This document shows positions 33,762 to 45,746 of a DNA stretch of 64,000 nucleotides, piece after piece. Location of the stretch: positions 124,001-188,000 of IMG/VR virus record IMGVR_UViG_3300042558_004148. The stretch is one strand, 5' to 3'. The notes beneath the pieces are model-generated. The model was not told the origin of the DNA and made no database searches. It saw nothing but the letters and a program-made list of their open reading frames with translations. Every line of letters begins with the position of its first letter. Position 1 is the first letter of the stretch. The translations under genes were made by a program, and so were the position numbers.

Positions 33762-34218
33762 GGGGCTGACCAGGTATTGATTGGCAGCATTAGTTCTTTG
33801 AGACGCAGGCAGAGTTAGTATCGGAAACTCTTTAATAACCTATACAAAGCTTTAAACGGCAAAACAAATGTTTGGGAAGCGATCAACTCGTTTGGTGCTC
33901 CCGTATCTCAAGTTGAGTTCGCAGTAGCGGCTTAATTGTCGGGTCTCAGTTACCTAGGAACAGAAATCTGAAAGCGGGAAAAAGGGTTAATAGTACCACA
34001 AATCGATGAGCATCAGTAACCCTGAGCGAAAGCGACAGTCCACGGAGAAATCTAAGGAGCGCTGTTAATGTGATTCAAATGGAAGATTAGTTCACGATAA
34101 ACCGAACCATTTAATAAGGGAATCGTAAATTTTGTTTATTTAGAAAAATAAACTAAGCCTGTGAATGAGTCCTTAGGGTTAACTGAGCAAGACTAGGGTT
34201 CGATTCCCTACAGCTCCA
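33762..34218 (+). ncRNA. ssrA: tmRNA (about 457 nt), CCA not encoded
   Basis: GGGGCTG/CAGCTCC-A Ala acceptor stem with G3:U; T-arm TAGGG-TTCGATT-CCCTA; internal tag ORF 33858-33935 GKTNVWEAINSFGAPVSQVEFAVAA*. Confidence 0.93.
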
Positions 34219-34230
34219 CTGACGCGATTT

Positions 34231-39997: not shown

Positions 39998-41575
39998 ATG
40001 AAATTTTCAGAACTTACTGCAGAACAAATCTTTGAAATTTCGGAAATATATTGGAATAGAAAGGCTTCTTGGGACGAACGAATGAAGCAACTAAGTCAAT
40101 ATCTTGGAAAATCCGAAAGAACAGTTCAGAGTTGGATCTCCAAATTAGGGATCACAGAAAAATCGATACAAGAATCACCACAACTCATAAAAGCCAAAGA
40201 GAGGAAATTCGATAAGAAGAAAAAAAGATTTATCATAACTTGGGCTCAAAATGACACCCCTGTTCATGATGTATTCTTTTCAAATCTTGAAGAATATGCT
40301 AATTTCATTGGAGCTGATATACACGTAATAGCGGGTAGATACAAAAATCCAACTTCAGTATTTTCTGATAAGAAATATGATACTTGGGCCCCTAGAATAG
40401 AACCATTCCTGGATGCGAATAGACATGAGGTTCATAAACATATGTGGATTATGTCTGATGTGAAGATACAGCCAACAGCTGTTGATCCAATGACTGGACT
40501 ACAAGGTATGAGCGGAGTTAATTCATGCGTATTTGGATCTCCAAAGGTACACATGGAAACCATTCCTGTACTAGAGGGTAATCTTCCGAAGATGATGATG
40601 ACCACTGGAGCATGTACGGTTAAAAATTATACAGATTCAAAATCTGGAAAGAAAGGAGAATTCCACCACACTCTAGGGTTTGTTGTTGTTGAGATAAAGG
40701 ATTCAAAAATATTCTTTGCAAGACAAGTAACAGCAACGGACGACGGTGATTTCCACGATCTTTATCATTCGGTTAAATATAATCCTGATAGTAACATTAG
40801 TGAGGTTACTAGGATAACTAAAATACCAGCAGCGATATTAGGGGATTTACACTACGGTCAACATGATCCGGAAGTTATAAAGAAAACATTGGAGCTTTTT
40901 AGTAACTTAGAACCTGAAAATGTAGTTTTGCATGATGTTTTTGATGGACTTTCAATAAATCATCACGAATCAAACGATCCATTTATACAGTATCATAGAG
41001 AAATGGACGGTACAAATTCTCTAAGAAAGGAAATAGATGCAATGCTAATTGGTCTGGAGGATTTCGAGAAATATAACGTTACTATAGTTAGAAGTAACCA
41101 TGATGATTTCTTAGATAGATGGCTTAAAAACACAGATTGGAGAAAAGCAAGTACGCTGAAGAATTCCATAGAATATATGGAATTTAGTGCATTGCTATTA
41201 AAAGGTGAGGCACCTAAGGGGATTATACCGCATCTTATAAATAAAAGATTTCCTACATTCAAAACATTAGACCGAAGTGATAGCTTCGTTATAAATGGAT
41301 GGGAATTAGGACAGCACGGGGACATAGGATCAAATGGATCCAGAGGTTCACTTCTGCAATTCAGAAAGCTAAACACTAAAATAGTAGTTGGTCACTACCA
41401 CTCACCCGGTAGAAAGGATGGTGCTTTAGCTGTCGGTACATCAACCAAACTTAGAGTTAATTATAATCTAGGCCCTAGTGGATGGTTACAATCACACGTT
41501 ATAGTTCATGCTGATGGTAAGGCTCAACACATAAATTTCATTAAAGGTGAATTCACCACTATAAAACTCAAATAA
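39998..41575 (+). CDS. T5 A1-like protein (HTH + calcineurin-like nuclease/phosphoesterase)
   Basis: KRFIIT.AQN.T..H, TTG..T.KNY...K.G.K.E.HH, GDLH, HDVFD...NHH, SNHD, HG..G.NGSRG, GHYHS, YN.G.S.W match phage T5 A1; start placed after the promoter at 39941-39968. Confidence 0.8.
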   Translation: MKFSELTAEQIFEISEIYWNRKASWDERMKQLSQYLGKSERTVQSWISKLGITEKSIQESPQLIKAKERKFDKKKKRFIITWAQNDTPVHDVFFSNLEEYANFIGADIHVIAGRYKNPTSVFSDKKYDTWAPRIEPFLDANRHEVHKHMWIMSDVKIQPTAVDPMTGLQGMSGVNSCVFGSPKVHMETIPVLEGNLPKMMMTTGACTVKNYTDSKSGKKGEFHHTLGFVVVEIKDSKIFFARQVTATDDGDFHDLYHSVKYNPDSNISEVTRITKIPAAILGDLHYGQHDPEVIKKTLELFSNLEPENVVLHDVFDGLSINHHESNDPFIQYHREMDGTNSLRKEIDAMLIGLEDFEKYNVTIVRSNHDDFLDRWLKNTDWRKASTLKNSIEYMEFSALLLKGEAPKGIIPHLINKRFPTFKTLDRSDSFVINGWELGQHGDIGSNGSRGSLLQFRKLNTKIVVGHYHSPGRKDGALAVGTSTKLRVNYNLGPSGWLQSHVIVHADGKAQHINFIKGEFTTIKLK

Positions 41576-42153
41576 TGATGGATATTAGCAGTTATAAATT
41601 TATTGCGGGGGTTGACGAAGTTGGACGCGGGGGACTTAGTGGACCTGTAGTTGCAGCCGCTGTTATATTGCCAGCGGATTTTCATGACAGCCGGATTAAG
41701 GACAGTAAAACTATCAAAAGTCTAAAGAAGCGAGAGGAGCTGGAGCTATTAATAAAGGATAATGCAATATCTTGGGGTATTGGAGCAGCATCTCCGCAGG
41801 AAATAGATCAGATGAACATTTTACAAGCCACATTCTTAGCTATGAAAAGAGCTATTGATGCATGCTCACATAAGCCAGATTTTCTTTATATTGATGGTGA
41901 TAGATTTCCTGGTCATCAGGGAATACCTTATGAATGCGTCATTAAAGGTGATTCTAAAATCTTTAGTATCTCAGCTGCGTCGATATTAGCTAAAGTCCAT
42001 AGGGACAAGCTGATGAGAGAATTAGATTCACAGTACCCAAAATATCTATGGTCAAGAAATGTAGGATATGGAACAGCTGATCATATTAAGGCCATCAGGG
42101 AGACTGGAATAACCAAACATCACAGAAAAACATTTTGTCAAAATTTTATTTAA
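41575..42153 (+). CDS. rnhB: ribonuclease HII
   Basis: AGVDEVGRG..SGPVVAAAV, DSK, IDG, KGD..I.SISAASILAKV.RD, GYGT..H. Confidence 0.95.
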   Translation: MMDISSYKFIAGVDEVGRGGLSGPVVAAAVILPADFHDSRIKDSKTIKSLKKREELELLIKDNAISWGIGAASPQEIDQMNILQATFLAMKRAIDACSHKPDFLYIDGDRFPGHQGIPYECVIKGDSKIFSISAASILAKVHRDKLMRELDSQYPKYLWSRNVGYGTADHIKAIRETGITKHHRKTFCQNFI

Positions 42154-42159
42154 TAAATC

Positions 42160-42522
42160 ATGGAAAATAAAGAATTAGATGTAAACATCAATCCTCTAAC
42201 GGGGGAAGTTATTATCGATCCAGTAATGGATGAATCTGAGGAGATGGAAATCCTTGGTATAGAGGAATTTGATAGAGCCGAGTGGGTTTGCCAATTCGAC
42301 GAGGAAGATCCAATAGTTATAGCATGGAGCAATGACAAGACTGAACCTGGAGAATTATCATTCGTGCTAAAAGCAAGGTCGGATTCTAGTTTAATCTTTC
42401 AATCTGGAGATGGTCAGAAAACTTTTAGATTGTTCGCTAGAAGAATGCCAGATGAGAGAAGATCTGAACTTGATCAACACGAAGAAACTGAAAGAAAACT
42501 GAGAGAAGAAAATAATCTTTAA
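42160..42522 (+). CDS. hypothetical acidic protein
   Basis: Packed ORF. Confidence 0.55.
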   Translation: MENKELDVNINPLTGEVIIDPVMDESEEMEILGIEEFDRAEWVCQFDEEDPIVIAWSNDKTEPGELSFVLKARSDSSLIFQSGDGQKTFRLFARRMPDERRSELDQHEETERKLREENNL

Positions 42523-42525
42523 GAA

Positions 42526-43584
42526 ATGCAACCTAAACAACCAAAGTTTGATTTTAATGACATCCTAATTTCACCTGCTATCATAACTGATATCAGTACC
42601 AGAAAGCAGGTGAATGTTCTATACGATGATGAATATCTTCCTATATTTACTGCTCCAATGGACACGGTAGTATCTAGTGAAAATAAGGATTTCTTTTTCA
42701 GAAACGGTATCAAGGTCGTAATGCCAAGAACTGAAAAGCTGGGTAATGTTATCGTAACATCCCATGATTTATTTAGATCTGTGGGAATGGATGAATTTGA
42801 ATCGATATTTCTTGGAGAAATTTCTATAGAAGGAGGTCCTTTTTACATGTTGATTGATATAGCGAATGGACATATGAACAAGCTACTTGATATAACAAGG
42901 AGAGCAAAGGAGCAGTATGGAAATTCCATGATATTAATGGTTGGTAATATAGCACATCCGGAAACTTATAGGCTTTTCTCGTCAGCTGGAGCTGATTACA
43001 TTAGAATTGGTATAGGTAATGGGGCTGGTTGCTTAACAACAGTCCAGACTGGAGTTGGCTATCCCATGGCATCGCTAATTAAGGAATGCTATGATGTAAG
43101 CTGCACCATAGACAATCCAGCAAAGATTGTTGCTGATGGTGGATTTAAAAACTACTCCGATATTATAAAGGCGCTAGCATTAGGTGCTGATTATGTTATG
43201 TTGGGATCAATACTGAATAAAGCTTTAGAAAGTTGCGGTGAAACCTATCTTAGTAATAGAAGTATCAATTATGATAGTAAAGTAAACCAATATTCTGTTG
43301 ACACGGAGAACCTATTTAAAAACGGTGCTAAGATGTTTAAAAATTTTAGAGGGATGAGTACCAAGGAGGCACAGACCGCTATGGGTAAATCTATATTAAA
43401 GACCAGTGAGGGAGTTACTAGGGTGCAGGAGGTTGAATATACGATATCAGGATGGACAGATAACTTCAAAAGTTATCTAAGTTCTGCAATGAGCTATTCT
43501 AATGCAACAACACTGGAAGACTTTATAGGTAAAGCCGAATGGAATATGATAACCGTGAATTCATATGACAGGTTCAAAAAATAA
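42526..43584 (+). CDS. IMP dehydrogenase / GMP reductase family protein (no CBS domains)
   Basis: APMDTV, IDIANGH, GIGNGAGCLT catalytic Cys, ADGG, VMLGS, FRGMS, SEG. Confidence 0.88.
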   Translation: MQPKQPKFDFNDILISPAIITDISTRKQVNVLYDDEYLPIFTAPMDTVVSSENKDFFFRNGIKVVMPRTEKLGNVIVTSHDLFRSVGMDEFESIFLGEISIEGGPFYMLIDIANGHMNKLLDITRRAKEQYGNSMILMVGNIAHPETYRLFSSAGADYIRIGIGNGAGCLTTVQTGVGYPMASLIKECYDVSCTIDNPAKIVADGGFKNYSDIIKALALGADYVMLGSILNKALESCGETYLSNRSINYDSKVNQYSVDTENLFKNGAKMFKNFRGMSTKEAQTAMGKSILKTSEGVTRVQEVEYTISGWTDNFKSYLSSAMSYSNATTLEDFIGKAEWNMITVNSYDRFKK

Positions 43585-43620: not shown

Positions 43621-44070
43621 ATGAAATCTAATTATCTACTAACTATAGAGTTAATATCAAAAAACAAATTCACTAAAGGTGAAATAGAGGGAATAAAGGA
43701 TATCTTAGATCTTGGTGTTGATAACACCCCATTTAGATCTATTTTTAACGATAGTCTTTCAATCAATTTTAATAGCTATCTTGAAGTTTATGCGGAGGAT
43801 ATAATATTTGATGCTGATGTACAGGAAGAACTTGGTAATTTAATTGAAAATATAGATTCGATTATACCAGGTGGATGGGAAAACGATTCCAAGATAGAAT
43901 GGGTAAGTGAATATCAACACACATCTTCTGTTTGGTACAAGGATGGTCAGAAATGGATCAACGTTATCAAGGAAAATGATAGAGGAATATTAGGAGAAGA
44001 TGAAGAATGGAATGAAGAACTTGATGACCATGGTTACGGTTCGGATTTCGATGACGATGAATGGAACTAA
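43621..44070 (+). CDS. hypothetical acidic protein
   Basis: ORF after GGTATATA variant promoter. Confidence 0.55.
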   Translation: MKSNYLLTIELISKNKFTKGEIEGIKDILDLGVDNTPFRSIFNDSLSINFNSYLEVYAEDIIFDADVQEELGNLIENIDSIIPGGWENDSKIEWVSEYQHTSSVWYKDGQKWINVIKENDRGILGEDEEWNEELDDHGYGSDFDDDEWN

Positions 44071-44094
44071 TTTTTTAATTAGGATATATAATTT

Positions 44095-44176
44095 AAGGGT
44101 GCCTTTCGTGCTTAGTGTCCCGGGTCAGAGTGGCCTTAGAATTGTTCATGTATAATGAGCAGTGATGGGATTTTAA
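44095..44176 (+). ncRNA. candidate structured 5' leader RNA (three-way junction plus long-range pairing arm)
   Basis: GC-rich island after GATATATA (44083-44090): P1 44112-44122/44166-44176, P2 44123-44127/44131-44135, P3 44141-44149/44155-44163; 44095-44108 complementary to 45064-45077. Confidence 0.55.
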
Positions 44177-44193
44177 AAAATAAAAAAGGTAAA

Positions 44194-45048
44194 ATGAAAA
44201 CAAACAAAACAATGCAGGGGCTAAATTCTCCTGAAGCTTGGGTAGCCGTAGCCAGCAATAGACAAAAAATATACGGAGCAAACGAGGATCTGGTTTACCT
44301 TGACGATAACCAGGAATTTCAGATTGAGTTATTTAATCCAACATCTGAAAAATACCTAGCTAAAATTTATCTTAATGATAAATTGATTAGCAACACTGGC
44401 TTAGTTCTTAAGCCGGGACAGAGATACTTCCTTGATAGATACCTGGACGAAAAGAAGAAATTCTTATTTTCAACCTATGAGGTAGATTCGTCTGATGAAG
44501 TAAAGGCTGCAATCAGAAATAATGGTAAGGTTAAGGTTGAGTTCTTTAAGGAGATACCAGTATTCAATAATCCGATCTCTATTAATACCGGGACTGCAAT
44601 ATTCACCCAATATCCAACAAATCCGTGGTACGGTGGAAGCTGGGGTGGAAGTTTTGGCGGGAATGTTTATTGTGGTACAACACTATCCGGTACAACGGGT
44701 ACAACTTTTACCACGACCTCTGCCGCTAATAATAACATATCTTTTACATCATCTCTTTCCTCAGGGAATACCGCTTATTATAGCTCTCCTGTAGCTGGAT
44801 CTGCTAATGTATCAGGAACTTTAGAAACCGGTATGGTAGAGAAGGGAAGTAAATCGGATCAGTCTTTTGGTAATGATAGCGGATCTTATTCTCTGTACAG
44901 CTCATACACTAGTGAATATCAAATATTACCAAGATCCACTAAGCCAGTAGAGGTATCTGAAATCAGATCATACTGCACAGGCTGTGGAACAAGAATGAAA
45001 AAGAAAACATGGAAATTCTGTCCAAACTGCGGAGAATCCATGGAATAA
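44194..45048 (+). CDS. zinc-ribbon domain protein (beta-rich N-domain, low-complexity linker, CxxC...CxxC)
   Basis: EFQIELFNPT...GLVLKPGQRYFLDRY, ETG.VEKG..S.QSF, YCTGCG...KFCPNCG; ATG at 44194 follows an A-rich initiation region. Confidence 0.7.
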   Translation: MKTNKTMQGLNSPEAWVAVASNRQKIYGANEDLVYLDDNQEFQIELFNPTSEKYLAKIYLNDKLISNTGLVLKPGQRYFLDRYLDEKKKFLFSTYEVDSSDEVKAAIRNNGKVKVEFFKEIPVFNNPISINTGTAIFTQYPTNPWYGGSWGGSFGGNVYCGTTLSGTTGTTFTTTSAANNNISFTSSLSSGNTAYYSSPVAGSANVSGTLETGMVEKGSKSDQSFGNDSGSYSLYSSYTSEYQILPRSTKPVEVSEIRSYCTGCGTRMKKKTWKFCPNCGESME

Positions 45049-45063
45049 TAAATTAATTTAATT

Positions 45064-45077
45064 CGGAAGGCACCCTT
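45064..45077 (+). repeat. 3' arm of a 14-bp inverted repeat flanking the zinc-ribbon gene
   Basis: CGGAAGGCACCCTT pairs with AAGGGTGCCTTTCG (44095-44108): 13 Watson-Crick pairs and one G:U. Confidence 0.8.
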
Positions 45078-45146
45078 TTATTCAACCGAATATAAAATTA
45101 TAATATAGGGTTAATACTGATGATATATAGGCTAAAACAATTTTAA

Positions 45147-45746
45147 ATGAAAGCCAAAACGTTATTATTATTAACCCTATTATTTTCAACCAATCTTTTA
45201 TTTTCTCAGGTTCTTAGGGATTCGGTTAAAGTTAAAACTGATATCTATGAGGTTATCTACAGTGAGAAGCTGGAGCAACCAAGATTCATAAAATATGATG
45301 TGCTATGTCCCACTGGAACAGCATCTAGAGCTGGTATGGACTTCTATACCAACGACAGTATAAAAACCTCAGACAATCTGGATTATGTCAAAAATCTGTA
45401 CGATAAAGGACATCTAGCACCCGCTGCTGATTTTAATTGTACCAAAGACATGCTTAAGAAGACATTCAGTTACCTCAATTGCGCATTACAGGATCAATAC
45501 CTTAACAGAGGAGTTTGGCGAATCCTTGAAGAATATGAAAGAGAATTAGCTAAAAGCAGTAAAGTTACAGTGACAATAGAATTAGTATTTACCGCAAAAT
45601 CTAAGAAGCTACCAACAGGAGCCACTGTTCCCGACGGATTTTATAAGACGATATACGTCGAAAAAACCAAAAAAGTGTATAAATACTATTTTCCCAACAT
45701 AAAACCAACCAAACTCAAATATAGCGACTACTTATTAGGAAACTAA
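45147..45746 (+). CDS. secreted DNA/RNA non-specific endonuclease (NucA/EndoG-type)
   Basis: Signal peptide; YDKGHLAPAAD, TFSYLN..LQ...LNRGVWR.LE, VPDGFYK; GATATATA at 45122. Confidence 0.9.
   Translation: MKAKTLLLLTLLFSTNLLFSQVLRDSVKVKTDIYEVIYSEKLEQPRFIKYDVLCPTGTASRAGMDFYTNDSIKTSDNLDYVKNLYDKGHLAPAADFNCTKDMLKKTFSYLNCALQDQYLNRGVWRILEEYERELAKSSKVTVTIELVFTAKSKKLPTGATVPDGFYKTIYVEKTKKVYKYYFPNIKPTKLKYSDYLLGN

What the first reader, a model, noticed from the sequence alone, without database searches (positions are those of the whole stretch)
44083..45077. Gene enclosed by a 14-bp 5'-3' panhandle plus a three-way-junction leader: candidate new RNA element
Seen: right after GATATATA (44083-44090) comes AAGGGTGCCTTTCG (44095-44108). 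Its complement CGGAAGGCACCCTT (45064-45077, one G:U) lies 15 nt after the stop of the zinc-ribbon ORF, about 950 nt away, followed by TT. Between the 5' arm and the ATG is a GC-rich fold: P1 TTAG-GTCCCG/TGGGAT-TTAA, P2 GGTCA/TGGCC, P3 ATTGTTCAT/ATGAGCAGT, with several G:U pairs that point to RNA rather than DNA structure. No ordinary terminator hairpin follows the gene, and I saw no such arms around any other gene. GCCTTT in the 5' arm could alternatively pair with AAAGGT just before the ATG. Inference: a self-closed mRNA (stabilised, processed or circularised, or translated only when full-length), possibly bound by its own zinc-ribbon product, forming an uncharacterised RNA-protein module.
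Basis: partly seen in the sequence, partly recalled or inferred. Interest (0 to 1): 0.8.

Follow-up and report, generated by a model that had tools for sequence, protein, structure and literature searches.

The report
Self-closing phage mRNA with structured leader
A gene found in many huge bacteriophages makes an mRNA whose very first bases pair with bases just after its stop codon, behind a conserved three-armed RNA fold that is in no RNA database; both features have been kept by compensating mutations, so this looks like a real, undescribed way of controlling one phage gene.

Summary
The arms (44095-44108 / 45064-45077, 13 of 14 complementary, the mismatch a U:G) are the strongest gene-flanking complementarity among 111 ORFs in the window. 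Their 9-mer core occurs nowhere else in the 218 kb record.

The decisive evidence is comparative:
- **Arms:** in 49 of 60 distinct homologous loci from other huge phages (36-100% protein identity), the segment right after the promoter is complementary to a segment 5-17 nt after the stop codon. The arm sequences differ completely between clades.
- **Leader:** the three-way junction (44110-44178) has 20 pairs, 17 with compensatory changes and conserved G:U pairs. It matches no Rfam family and occurs once per genome, always upstream of this gene. A weaker match lies upstream of the homolog in Prevotella megaphage Lak-B1.
- **Third partner:** a gene-specific box just before the ATG (AAAGGT here, AGTTAA elsewhere) is also complementary to the 5' arm and changes with it.

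Best reading: an RNA switch in which the 5' end pairs either with the pre-ATG box or, once made, with the 3' arm. This closes the mRNA, protects its 5' end and licenses translation of complete transcripts. The structure is well supported. The function is inferred. Binding by the zinc-ribbon protein was not tested.

The parts
44083..44092 (+). Promoter-like element GATATATAAT, which contains TATAAT at 44087-44092. It places the transcription start at about the first bases of the 5' arm.
   Evidence: GATATATA occurs 17 times in the window against 8.7 expected. It lies directly upstream of three consecutive genes (44083, 45122, 45758). It is conserved upstream of the 5' arm in the window's clade. 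Other clades have TTGACA-16/17-TATATT at the same place. The transcription start is inferred, not mapped.
44095..44108 (+). 5' arm AAGGGTGCCTTTCG. It pairs with the 3' arm. Its GCCTTT (44101-44106) can pair instead with the pre-ATG box.
   Evidence: verify the sequence and the match. Cognate complementarity is conserved in 49/60 loci. The predicted probability that it pairs with the 3' arm in the full-length RNA is 0.95.
44110..44178 (+). Conserved three-way-junction leader RNA. P1 is 44112-44121 / 44167-44176, P2 is 44122-44126 / 44132-44136, P3 is 44141-44149 / 44155-44163. The junction sequence is TTAGA-ATTG.
   Evidence: RNAalifold predicts 20 pairs, 17 of them compensatory. 96.7% of cells are paired, against 35-52% in shifted controls. 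Covariance model R1 hits here at 59.8 bits, E 1.8e-13, and once per genome.
44179..44193 (+). A-rich linker containing the pre-ATG box AAAGGT (44185-44190), the alternative partner of the 5' arm.
   Evidence: It forms the closing helix of the leader's minimum-energy fold. The box is gene-specific: only 1-2 of 75 ORFs in the window have a Shine-Dalgarno-like box. It changes together with the 5' arm across clades.
44194..45048 (+). ORF of 284 aa. The model shows an Ig-like beta-sandwich (about residues 14-120), a disordered G/S/T-rich linker (123-209) and a C-terminal zinc ribbon (about 258-282). Function unknown. It is conserved in huge phages.
   Evidence: There are 1659 homologs with E <= 1e-3. 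Pfam gives only zinc-ribbon matches. The AlphaFold model has mean pLDDT 55, rising to 70-84 in the N-terminal domain. PDB gives no informative match.
45064..45077 (+). 3' arm CGGAAGGCACCCTT, 15 nt after the stop codon. It is complementary to the 5' arm and carries the same AAGG core as the pre-ATG box.
   Evidence: In the 49 scored loci the 3' arm starts 5-17 nt (median 11) after the stop codon.
45061..45091 (+). Possible weak local hairpin, ATTCGG (45061-45066) with CCGAAT (45086-45091), holding the rest of the 3' arm in its loop. It competes with the long-range pairing. Weakly supported.
   Evidence: It can be read directly from the sequence, and similar stems are visible in some relatives. 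RNAalifold finds no consensus local structure across the clade.

Best explanation
This is a cis-acting RNA structure of a monocistronic phage mRNA, built from four elements.

1. A 5'-terminal segment (the 5' arm) that starts at about the transcription start.
2. A conserved three-way-junction leader.
3. A short gene-specific box a few bases before the ATG that can pair with the 5' arm.
4. A longer copy of that box 5-17 nt after the stop codon (the 3' arm).

Proposed mechanism. While the RNA is being made, the 5' arm pairs with the pre-ATG box. This closes a helix around the three-way junction and partly occludes the start region. When the 3' arm is transcribed, its longer complementarity takes over the 5' arm. 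The mRNA then closes on itself: its 5' end is buried in a helix, hidden from 5'-end-dependent RNases, and the start region is freed. Only complete transcripts would therefore be stable and well translated.

What is shown and what is inferred. Shown by computation: the pairings, their conservation and covariation, their fixed positions, and their thermodynamic dominance. Inferred: the transcript ends, the order of folding, and the consequences for stability and translation.
For: **Arms**
- 49 of 60 distinct loci exceed the 99th percentile of shuffled controls, and 31 exceed every one of 1200 shuffles. The mean score is 26.0 for cognate pairs, 15.9 for non-cognate pairs and 14.0 for shuffles.
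- Arm sequences differ completely between clades: GGTGCC type, GGAAAGAGCC, TTGAAGACGGTTTCCTT, GACCTTGTGGTT, GGAACCTC, and nnnGTTAACTC.
- Anchoring on the invariant GTTAAC gives the flanking pairs CG12/TA4/AT2, GC10/AT7 and TA15/AT4.
- The window differs from its nearest relatives by a compensatory G-C versus A-T pair.

**Positions**
- In the loci scored, the 5' arm core begins from 2 nt inside to 16 nt after a -10-like element.
- The 3' arm begins 5-17 nt after the stop codon. In 26 of 49 loci it lies before a canonical terminator.

**Folding**
- In 14 of 14 diverse full-length mRNAs of about 1 kb, the partition function gives P(5' arm: 3' arm) of 0.88-1.00.

**Leader**
- 17 of 20 pairs are compensatory, 96.7% of cells are paired, and G:U pairs are conserved, so the structure is RNA of the + strand.
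- The covariance model R1 finds it once in the 218 kb record, once in the complete 373 kb genome, and in held-out loci always upstream of the gene. In Lak-B1 it hits at 26.7 bits.

**Third partner**
- The box/arm combinations are CCTTT/AAAGG, TTAACT/AGTTAA, TTTCCTT/AAGGAAA and CCTC/GAGG.
- The box is not a generic ribosome-binding signal: AAGG-like boxes precede only 1-2 of 75 ORFs in the window, and AGTTAA precedes 0 of 62 other ORFs in its clade.
- In leader-only folds the arm pairs with the start region more than shuffled arms do in 39 of 49 loci. In the window this is 7.3 versus 2.1 nt, and the start region is 0.51 unpaired versus 0.81. In the full-length RNA it is 0.83 unpaired.
- In L077 and L087 an A-to-G change in the 5' arm gives a G:U pair with both partners.

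**Strain conservation**
- A strain about 93% identical has no differences across 44047-44150, against 113 differences in 1750 nt overall.
Against: - No transcript ends or RNA structure data exist. Public runs gave assembled contigs only.
- The arms are mostly perfect Watson-Crick, so they do not by themselves prove RNA rather than DNA. G:U versus A:C counts are 13 versus 7 without gaps and 12 versus 12 with gaps that run into AT-rich flanks. My own reading of the helix cores gives about 12 versus 3-5.
- Equilibrium folding of RNAs truncated at the stop codon shows only a small loss of start-site accessibility (0.83 to 0.76 in the window). It shows almost no arm-to-box pairing in the GTTAAC clade. 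The licensing step therefore depends on co-transcriptional kinetics that were not modelled.
- About 8-11 loci lack clear arms. At least two of these (L038, L041) reflect a wrongly chosen start codon rather than absence. L042 and L043 have a local 5' hairpin instead. That fits 5'-end protection but not licensing of full-length transcripts.
Confidence: 0.6

Rival explanations
1. The closure exists only to protect the mRNA. The 5' end is buried in a duplex next to the 3' end, shielding the RNA from 5'-end-dependent RNases (RNase E, J or Y, or RppH), as in B. subtilis hbs. The complementarity to the pre-ATG box would have no switching role.
For: - The arm begins at about the predicted transcription start and is always inside the transcription unit.
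- L042 and L043 replace it with a local 5'-terminal hairpin.
- At equilibrium, start-site accessibility barely changes between full-length and truncated RNA.
- There is a precedent: a 14-bp 5'/3'-UTR interaction in hbs mRNA modulates RNase Y cleavage (PMC5737220).
Against: - It does not explain why a distant partner is kept when a local hairpin would do.
- It does not explain why a gene-specific box complementary to the 5' arm sits just before the ATG and changes with it in genomes that otherwise lack such boxes.
Confidence: 0.2
2. The long-range duplex is a processing or 3'-end-forming signal. It would be either an RNase III site that cuts the gene out of a longer transcript, or the two halves of a long-range terminator stem followed by a U-run. 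This would apply especially in the window's clade, which lacks an ordinary terminator.
For: - The 22 scored loci of the window's clade have no canonical terminator after the 3' arm, whereas other clades do (26/49). RNAalifold finds no consensus local 3' hairpin in this clade.
- Arms in this clade are long, 23-24 bp with bulges in L015, L021 and L028.
- In the window, L015, L018, L026 and L073 the 3' arm is followed directly by a T-run.
Against: - The window's own duplex is only 14 bp, or 19 with mismatches. Arms of 10-12 bp in the clades that have terminators are too short for RNase III by the usual rule of about 20 bp (established knowledge, not tested here).
- Several members of the clade have no T-run after the arm.
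- No RNA ends were observed.
Confidence: 0.1
3. The arms act as DNA. They would be inverted repeats for site-specific inversion of the gene, or a pair of operator sites for one DNA-binding protein. The complementarity would then be a by-product of two inverted copies of one protein-binding site.
For: - The arms are nearly perfect Watson-Crick and their cores are partly palindromic (GTTAAC; AAAGG-TG-CCTTT).
- Two inverted copies of one binding site would also co-vary as reverse complements.
- The G:U over A:C excess in the arms is only modest.
Against: - Neither the 218 kb record nor the complete 373 kb genome of the same phage encodes a serine or tyrosine recombinase.
- In every locus inspected, the promoter-like element lies upstream of the gene and any terminator downstream, so no inverted form was seen. 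The four runs laid, three RNA-labelled and one DNA, showed no strand-changing joints, though these were contigs only.
- The arms differ by conserved 1-nt bulges and range from 10 to 24 bp.
- The arms always lie inside the transcription unit, between promoter and ORF and between stop codon and terminator.
- They directly adjoin a leader that is clearly RNA.
- A third, partial copy sits at the start codon.
- The element is single-copy per genome, so it is not a transposon.
Confidence: 0.07
4. The arm match in this window is a chance inverted repeat and only the leader is functional.
For: Exact 11-12-mer inverted matches within 2 kb are common in this AT-rich window. With up to 3 mismatches, the pattern finds no more matches than shuffles do.
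Against: - The gene is the top outlier among 111 ORFs.
- The 9-mer is unique to these two sites in 218 kb.
- The same relationship, with different sequences, holds in 49/60 homologous loci.
Confidence: 0.03

Closest known systems
B. subtilis hbs mRNA 5'/3'-UTR interaction (Braun, Durand and Condon 2017, PMC5737220)
   Same: Both have a long-range duplex of about 14 bp between the 5' UTR and the 3' UTR of a monocistronic mRNA. In hbs it modulates access of ribonucleases to the leader and links stability to translation.
   Different: hbs is a single bacterial gene studied experimentally. Here the pairing is conserved with full turnover of arm sequence across a large family of phage genes. It is combined with a conserved three-way-junction leader and a third partner at the start codon. 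No nuclease data exist for it.
hok/sok-type type I toxin mRNAs (fbi-tac fold-back; also aapA1 and tisB classes). Cited from established knowledge, not tested here.
   Same: In both, a 5'-terminal element has two alternative partners, one at the 3' end of the same mRNA and one in the leader. The choice between them sets translatability.
   Different: In hok the 5'-3' pairing keeps the full-length mRNA inert and 3' trimming activates it. Here the predicted polarity is the reverse: closure frees the start site. The product is a 284-aa Ig-like/zinc-ribbon protein, not a small membrane toxin, and no antisense RNA is evident.
S. aureus icaR mRNA 5'-3' UTR pairing (Ruiz de los Mozos et al. 2013, PMC3868564)
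   Same: Both involve base pairing between the UTRs of one bacterial mRNA that controls translation.
   Different: In icaR the 3' UTR carries an anti-SD motif that pairs with the ribosome-binding site and represses translation, and it recruits RNase III. Here the 3' arm has the same sense as the pre-ATG box, so it cannot pair with that box. It competes with it for the 5' arm.
Long-range anti-SD-like sequences that pair with the ribosome-binding site (Gill et al. 2025 preprint, PMC12697547)
   Same: Both show that a sequence complementary to the start region, placed far away in the same mRNA, can repress expression. This makes an unsequestered 5' arm a plausible repressor.
   Different: That work concerns incidental, generally disfavoured sequences in B. 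subtilis genes. Here the complementary element is conserved and has its own dedicated decoy.
Flanking processing stems of rRNA precursors and phage T7 RNase III sites (established knowledge)
   Same: In both, sequences on either side of a functional RNA pair over a long distance.
   Different: Those stems are at least about 20 bp and are cleaved. The window's duplex is 14 bp, many relatives have 10-12 bp, and no cleavage evidence exists.

Membership tests
Any Rfam 15 family (riboswitches, leaders, sRNAs) | Match to a curated covariance model at or above its gathering score | tested here: not met
   The whole-window scan found only a tmRNA elsewhere. A permissive scan of 44040-44240 gave only chance-level hits: CRISPR-DR48 at 19.2 bits against a gathering score of 50, and SNORD15 at 9.9 against 75.
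5'/3'-UTR interacting mRNAs (hbs type) | Complementary segments in the 5' UTR and 3' UTR of the same transcript | tested here: met
   Found by computation. The arms lie between the promoter and ORF and between the stop codon and terminator, are conserved and covarying, and have a predicted pairing probability of 0.88-1.00.
5'/3'-UTR interacting mRNAs (hbs type) | The interaction changes RNase cleavage or mRNA half-life | not testable with these tools
   Requires experiments. No raw RNA reads were available.
Type I toxin mRNA with fold-back inhibition (hok type) | A small toxic peptide ORF and a cis-encoded antisense RNA | tested here: not met
   The ORF is 284 aa, a soluble-looking Ig-like domain plus a zinc ribbon. 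No antisense RNA gene or Rfam hit was found.
icaR-type repression | The 3' UTR element is complementary to the ribosome-binding region | tested here: not met
   The 3' arm (AAGG core) has the same sense as the pre-ATG box AAAGGT. Both are complementary to the 5' arm, not to each other.
Intrinsic terminator | A local G+C-rich hairpin followed by a U-run directly after the gene | tested here: not met
   None is found after the gene in the window or in the 22 scored loci of its clade, and there is no consensus local structure. Other clades do have one, downstream of the 3' arm (26/49).
RNase III processing stem | A continuous duplex of about 20 bp or more | tested here: inconclusive
   The window has 14 bp, or 19 nt at 84%. 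Some relatives have 23-24 bp with bulges and many have 10-12 bp. Cleavage cannot be tested here.
Invertible DNA segment (Hin/Gin/Cin or tyrosine-recombinase switches) | A recombinase gene, and both orientations present in populations | tested here: not met
   PF00239 and PF00589 give no match in the 218 kb record or in the complete 373 kb genome. Every locus inspected has the same promoter-gene-terminator order. The four runs laid showed no strand-changing joints, but these were contigs only, so rare forms would be missed.
Transposon or MITE with terminal inverted repeats | Multiple copies with conserved terminal repeats | tested here: not met
   The arm core occurs only at these two sites in 218 kb. 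There is one leader per genome. Arm sequences differ between lineages while the enclosed gene is orthologous.

The most novel reading that the evidence does not exclude
The mRNA works as a true closed loop. In the window's clade, which has no ordinary terminator, the transcript's own 5' end supplies the upstream half of the helix that forms or defines the 3' end. The closure also places the stop codon, only 5-17 nt from the duplex, next to the start region, so that terminating ribosomes re-initiate. That would be a prokaryotic counterpart of the eukaryotic closed-loop mRNA. The three-way junction would serve as the docking site for a regulator, possibly the zinc-ribbon product itself.
Probability: 0.12. 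Interest if true: 0.9.

Novelty: new variant of a known kind. Interest (0 to 1): 0.72.

Why it matters
Long-range pairing between the two ends of a bacterial or phage mRNA is known from a handful of individually studied genes (hbs, icaR, hok-type toxins). Comparative evidence for it is rarely this broad. Here one gene family of huge phages, from lake-water phages to a weaker match in the gut Lak megaphages, keeps the pairing while the arm sequences turn over completely. It adds a new structured leader motif and a third, competing partner at the start codon.

If the model holds, it gives a natural three-part RNA device that ties stability and translation to completion of the transcript. It would also be a clean system for testing how 5'-3' communication works in prokaryotic mRNAs. 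Finally, it flags an unknown but widely conserved huge-phage protein whose dosage evidently matters.

Tried and rejected
- **Rfam.** Neither the gathering-threshold scan nor the permissive scan found a family for the leader.
- **tRNA scan.** It found nothing.
- **Arm statistics within the window.** The k-mer and mismatch searches show that the match alone is not significant, so I turned to homologous loci.
- **RNAduplex on long flanks.** It over-extended the helices and timed out once. I replaced it with short windows and gapless scoring.
- **G:U versus A:C counts in the arms, as a strand test.** The result was inconclusive: 13 versus 7 without gaps, 12 versus 12 with gaps that run into AT-rich flanks.
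- **Public reads.** Only Logan contigs were available, and the RNA-labelled libraries look like DNA. They showed no transcript ends and no joints, so they are uninformative for both RNA ends and DNA inversion.
- **A consensus local 3' hairpin or terminator in the window's clade.** RNAalifold predicted no pairs, so the loop-presentation idea has only anecdotal support.
- **Protein function.**
  - Pfam, PHROGs, PDB sequence search and Foldseek against PDB gave only a generic Ig-like fold and a zinc ribbon.
  - The ESM Atlas gave only viral hypothetical proteins.
  - BFVD matched uncharacterised proteins of giant viruses and nudiviruses.
- **Recombinase search for the inversion rival.** It found none.
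- **Panhandle in Lak-B1.** I saw only a weak 8-bp AT-rich complementarity and do not count it.
Full report
**1. What is in the window**

The window is part of a 218 kb IMG/VR phage record. Near-identical contigs of 343-373 kb exist. One of them, 373,467 bp with direct terminal repeats, is rated complete. The DNA comes from lake-water metagenomes.

- GATATATA at 44083-44090.
- 5' arm AAGGGTGCCTTTCG at 44095-44108.
- 3' arm CGGAAGGCACCCTT at 45064-45077, which is 15 nt after the TAA stop at 45046-45048 and is followed by TTTTATT.

The arms are 13/14 complementary, and the mismatch is a U:G on the + strand. The ORF most likely starts at ATG 44194 and encodes 284 aa. The upstream in-frame ATG at 44155 lies inside stem P3.

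**2. Is it more than chance?**

The arm match alone would not be convincing. The window has 101 exact 11-mer inverted matches at 0.2-2 kb spacing, and the pattern search with up to 3 mismatches is no better than shuffles.

Three further results change that:
- The core AAGGGTGCC occurs only at these two sites in the whole 218 kb record.
- I scored all 111 ORFs of at least 70 aa for upstream/downstream complementarity. This gene is a clear outlier: score 33, next best 24, mean 16.1, sd 3.1.
- The leader folds more stably than shuffles (-27.2 kcal/mol, z = -2.75).

**3. Comparative evidence for the 5'-3' pairing**

The protein family is large, with 1659 homologs at E <= 1e-3, many on contigs of 100-430 kb. 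I collected 89 loci from viral contigs.

The nearest relatives (58-61% protein identity) have longer arms, for example TGTATTGAAAGGTGCCTTTC with GAAAGGCACCTTTTCAATACA. They differ from the window by a compensatory change, GGGTGCC:GGCACCC versus AGGTGCC:GGCACCT.

More distant clades have entirely different arms at the same two positions:
- GGAAAGAGCC with GGCTCTTTCC.
- TTGAAGACGGTTTCCTT with AAGGAAACGTCTTCAA.
- GACCTTGTGGTT with AACCACAAGGTC.
- GGAACCTCAC with GTGAGGTTCC.
- A large clade of the form nnnGTTAACTC with GAGTTAACnnn.

A test that does not depend on choosing the helices gave these results:
- 49 of 60 distinct loci exceed the 99th percentile of shuffled 3' flanks.
- 31 exceed the maximum of 1200 shuffles.
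- Cognate pairs score 26.0 on average, non-cognate pairs 15.9 and shuffles 14.0.

Anchoring on the invariant GTTAAC, the adjacent positions pair as CG12/TA4/AT2, GC10/AT7 and TA15/AT4.

Positions are fixed across the 49 scored loci:
- The arm core starts from 2 nt inside to 16 nt after a -10-like element. That element is TTGACA-16/17-TATATT in the GTTAAC clade and GATATATAA in the window's clade.
- The 5' arm ends 76-95 nt before the ATG.
- The 3' arm starts 5-17 nt (median 11) after the stop codon.
- In 26 of 49 loci the 3' arm lies upstream of a canonical terminator.

Partition-function folding of 14 diverse full-length mRNAs of about 1 kb gives a probability of 0.88-1.00 that the two arms pair with each other. 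In the window it is 0.95.

**4. The leader is a new conserved RNA structure**

An alignment of 54 leaders gives a three-way junction of 20 pairs, 17 of them with compensatory changes. The pair counts are as follows:
- 96.7% of cells are paired, against 35-52% when partners are shifted by 1-3 columns.
- The covariation score is 0.651, against at most 0.21 in the shifted controls.
- None of 500 shuffles reaches the observed values.
- Several pairs are conserved as G:U, for example in 48, 44 and 48 of 53 sequences. This marks the structure as RNA of the + strand.

A covariance model of the junction (R1) gives these results:
- It hits the window at 44110-44178 with 59.8 bits.
- It hits once in the 218 kb record and once in the complete 373 kb genome.
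- It hits loci held out of the model, always just upstream of the gene.
- It hits at 26.7 bits upstream of the homolog in Prevotella megaphage Lak-B1.

No Rfam family matches. A strain about 93% identical shows no differences over 44047-44150, against 113 differences in 1750 nt overall.

**5. A third partner**

The 5' arm is also complementary to a short box 4-12 nt before the ATG, and this box changes together with the arm:
- CCTTT with AAAGG.
- TTAACT with AGTTAA.
- TTTCCTT with AAGGAAA.
- CCTC with GAGG.
- CTCGT with ACGAG.

The box is not a generic ribosome-binding signal. Only 1-2 of 75 ORFs in the window have an AAGG-, AGGA- or GAGG-like box. AGTTAA precedes none of 62 other ORFs in the GTTAAC-clade loci.

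The 3' arm is therefore a longer copy of the pre-ATG box. In L077 and L087 an A-to-G change in the 5' arm gives a G:U pair with both partners.

In leader-only folds the arm pairs with the start region more than shuffled arms do in 39 of 49 loci. In the window this is 7.3 versus 2.1 nt, with the start region 0.51 unpaired versus 0.81. In the full-length RNA the start region is 0.83 unpaired and the arm-to-box pairing probability is 0.00.

One caveat applies. Equilibrium folds of RNAs truncated at the stop codon show only small changes, because the arm finds other partners in the ORF. The switch therefore rests on co-transcriptional folding, which I did not model.

**6. Rivals**

- **DNA-level inverted repeats.** Two inverted copies of one protein-binding site would also co-vary, and the arms are mostly perfect Watson-Crick. 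G:U versus A:C counts do not decide it: 13 versus 7, or 12 versus 12 when AT-rich flanks are included. The points against this reading are:
  - There is no serine or tyrosine recombinase in the record or in the complete genome.
  - No locus is in the inverted orientation, and the four runs laid showed no strand-changing joints, though these were contigs only.
  - The arms carry conserved bulges and their lengths range from 10 to 24 bp.
  - The arms always lie inside the transcription unit.
  - They adjoin a leader that is unambiguously RNA.
  - A third partial copy sits at the start codon.
- **A processing or termination role.** In the window's clade the 22 scored loci lack a canonical terminator and have no consensus local 3' hairpin. 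Their arms are up to 24 bp, and some are followed by a T-run. The duplex could help form the 3' end or be an RNase III site there. I could not test this.
- **Protection only.** L042 and L043 have a local 5'-terminal hairpin in place of the long-range pairing, which favours a 5'-end-protection component.

**7. The protein**

The AlphaFold model has mean pLDDT 55, with 70-84 in the N-terminal domain. It shows an Ig-like beta-sandwich (about residues 14-120, plus a strand at 238-246), a disordered G/S/T-rich linker (123-209) and a C-terminal zinc ribbon.

Pfam, PHROGs, PDB sequence search and Foldseek against PDB give nothing specific. BFVD shows resemblance to uncharacterised proteins of giant viruses and nudiviruses. 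Nothing bears on whether the protein binds its own leader.

**8. Comparison with known systems**

The closest known cases are these:
- The 14-bp 5'/3'-UTR interaction of B. subtilis hbs mRNA (PMC5737220).
- The icaR 5'-3' UTR pairing in S. aureus (PMC3868564).
- The fold-back logic of hok-type toxin mRNAs (established knowledge).
- The finding that distant sequences complementary to the start region repress expression (PMC12697547).

This element works like those systems but belongs to none of them. The 3' arm cannot pair with the start region, so it is not icaR-like. The predicted polarity is the opposite of hok, and the product is not a small toxin.

I rate it a new variant of a known kind. 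Long-range UTR pairing is known. The new features are the breadth of conservation, the three-partner arrangement and the leader motif.

**9. Verdict**

- The structural interpretation is supported, with about 0.85 confidence that the pairing is real and selected at the RNA level.
- The functional model, 5'-end protection plus licensing of complete transcripts, is the best inference, at about 0.4 for the licensing step specifically.
- The protein-binding idea is untested.

Noticed in passing
window 33762-34221 (+): A phage-encoded tmRNA gene (Rfam RF00023, 64.3 bits, E 8.9e-23). ARAGORN did not report it.
   Followed up: no
window 45105-45116 / 45169-45180: A perfect 12-bp inverted repeat, ATAGGGTTAATA with TATTAACCCTAT. 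It encloses the next gene's GATATATA motif (45122) and its start codon (45147) and is followed by TATTTT. That gene encodes a DNA/RNA non-specific endonuclease with a hydrophobic N-terminus. The repeat could mask the gene's start on read-through transcripts or act as a large-loop terminator.
   Followed up: no
window, 17 sites including 44083, 45122 and 45758: GATATATA is about twofold enriched (17 copies against 8.7 expected), mostly on the + strand. It lies directly upstream of three consecutive genes. It is probably a phage promoter element.
   Followed up: partly
whole window (ORF starts): Genes of this phage almost never have a Shine-Dalgarno-like box (1-2 of 75 ORFs), and their leaders are A/T-rich. 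This suggests a host that does not rely on SD pairing, for example Bacteroidota.
   Followed up: partly
L094 (Prevotella phage Lak-B1, MK250020.1) 1299-1368 and 1400-2310: Lak-B1 carries a homolog of the gene with an in-frame TAG (L094 1466-1468), consistent with stop-codon recoding. It has a weaker copy of the leader motif (26.7 bits) and an ordinary terminator after the gene. No convincing 5'-3' arms were seen.
   Followed up: partly
window 44194-45045 (protein model): Foldseek against predicted viral structures matches uncharacterised proteins of giant viruses, nudiviruses and iridoviruses (E 1e-5 to 1e-6). This hints at a fold shared across very different viruses.
   Followed up: no
L041 / L045, just upstream of the leader: A tRNA-like 3' end (GGTTCGAATCCTGTCC...) lies immediately upstream of the leader in these relatives.
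   Followed up: no
window 41575-43584: The neighbouring genes are an RNase HII-like ORF (41575-42153, identified by eye from the sequence) and an IMP dehydrogenase/GMP reductase-family protein (42526-43584, PF00478, E 1e-37).
   Followed up: no
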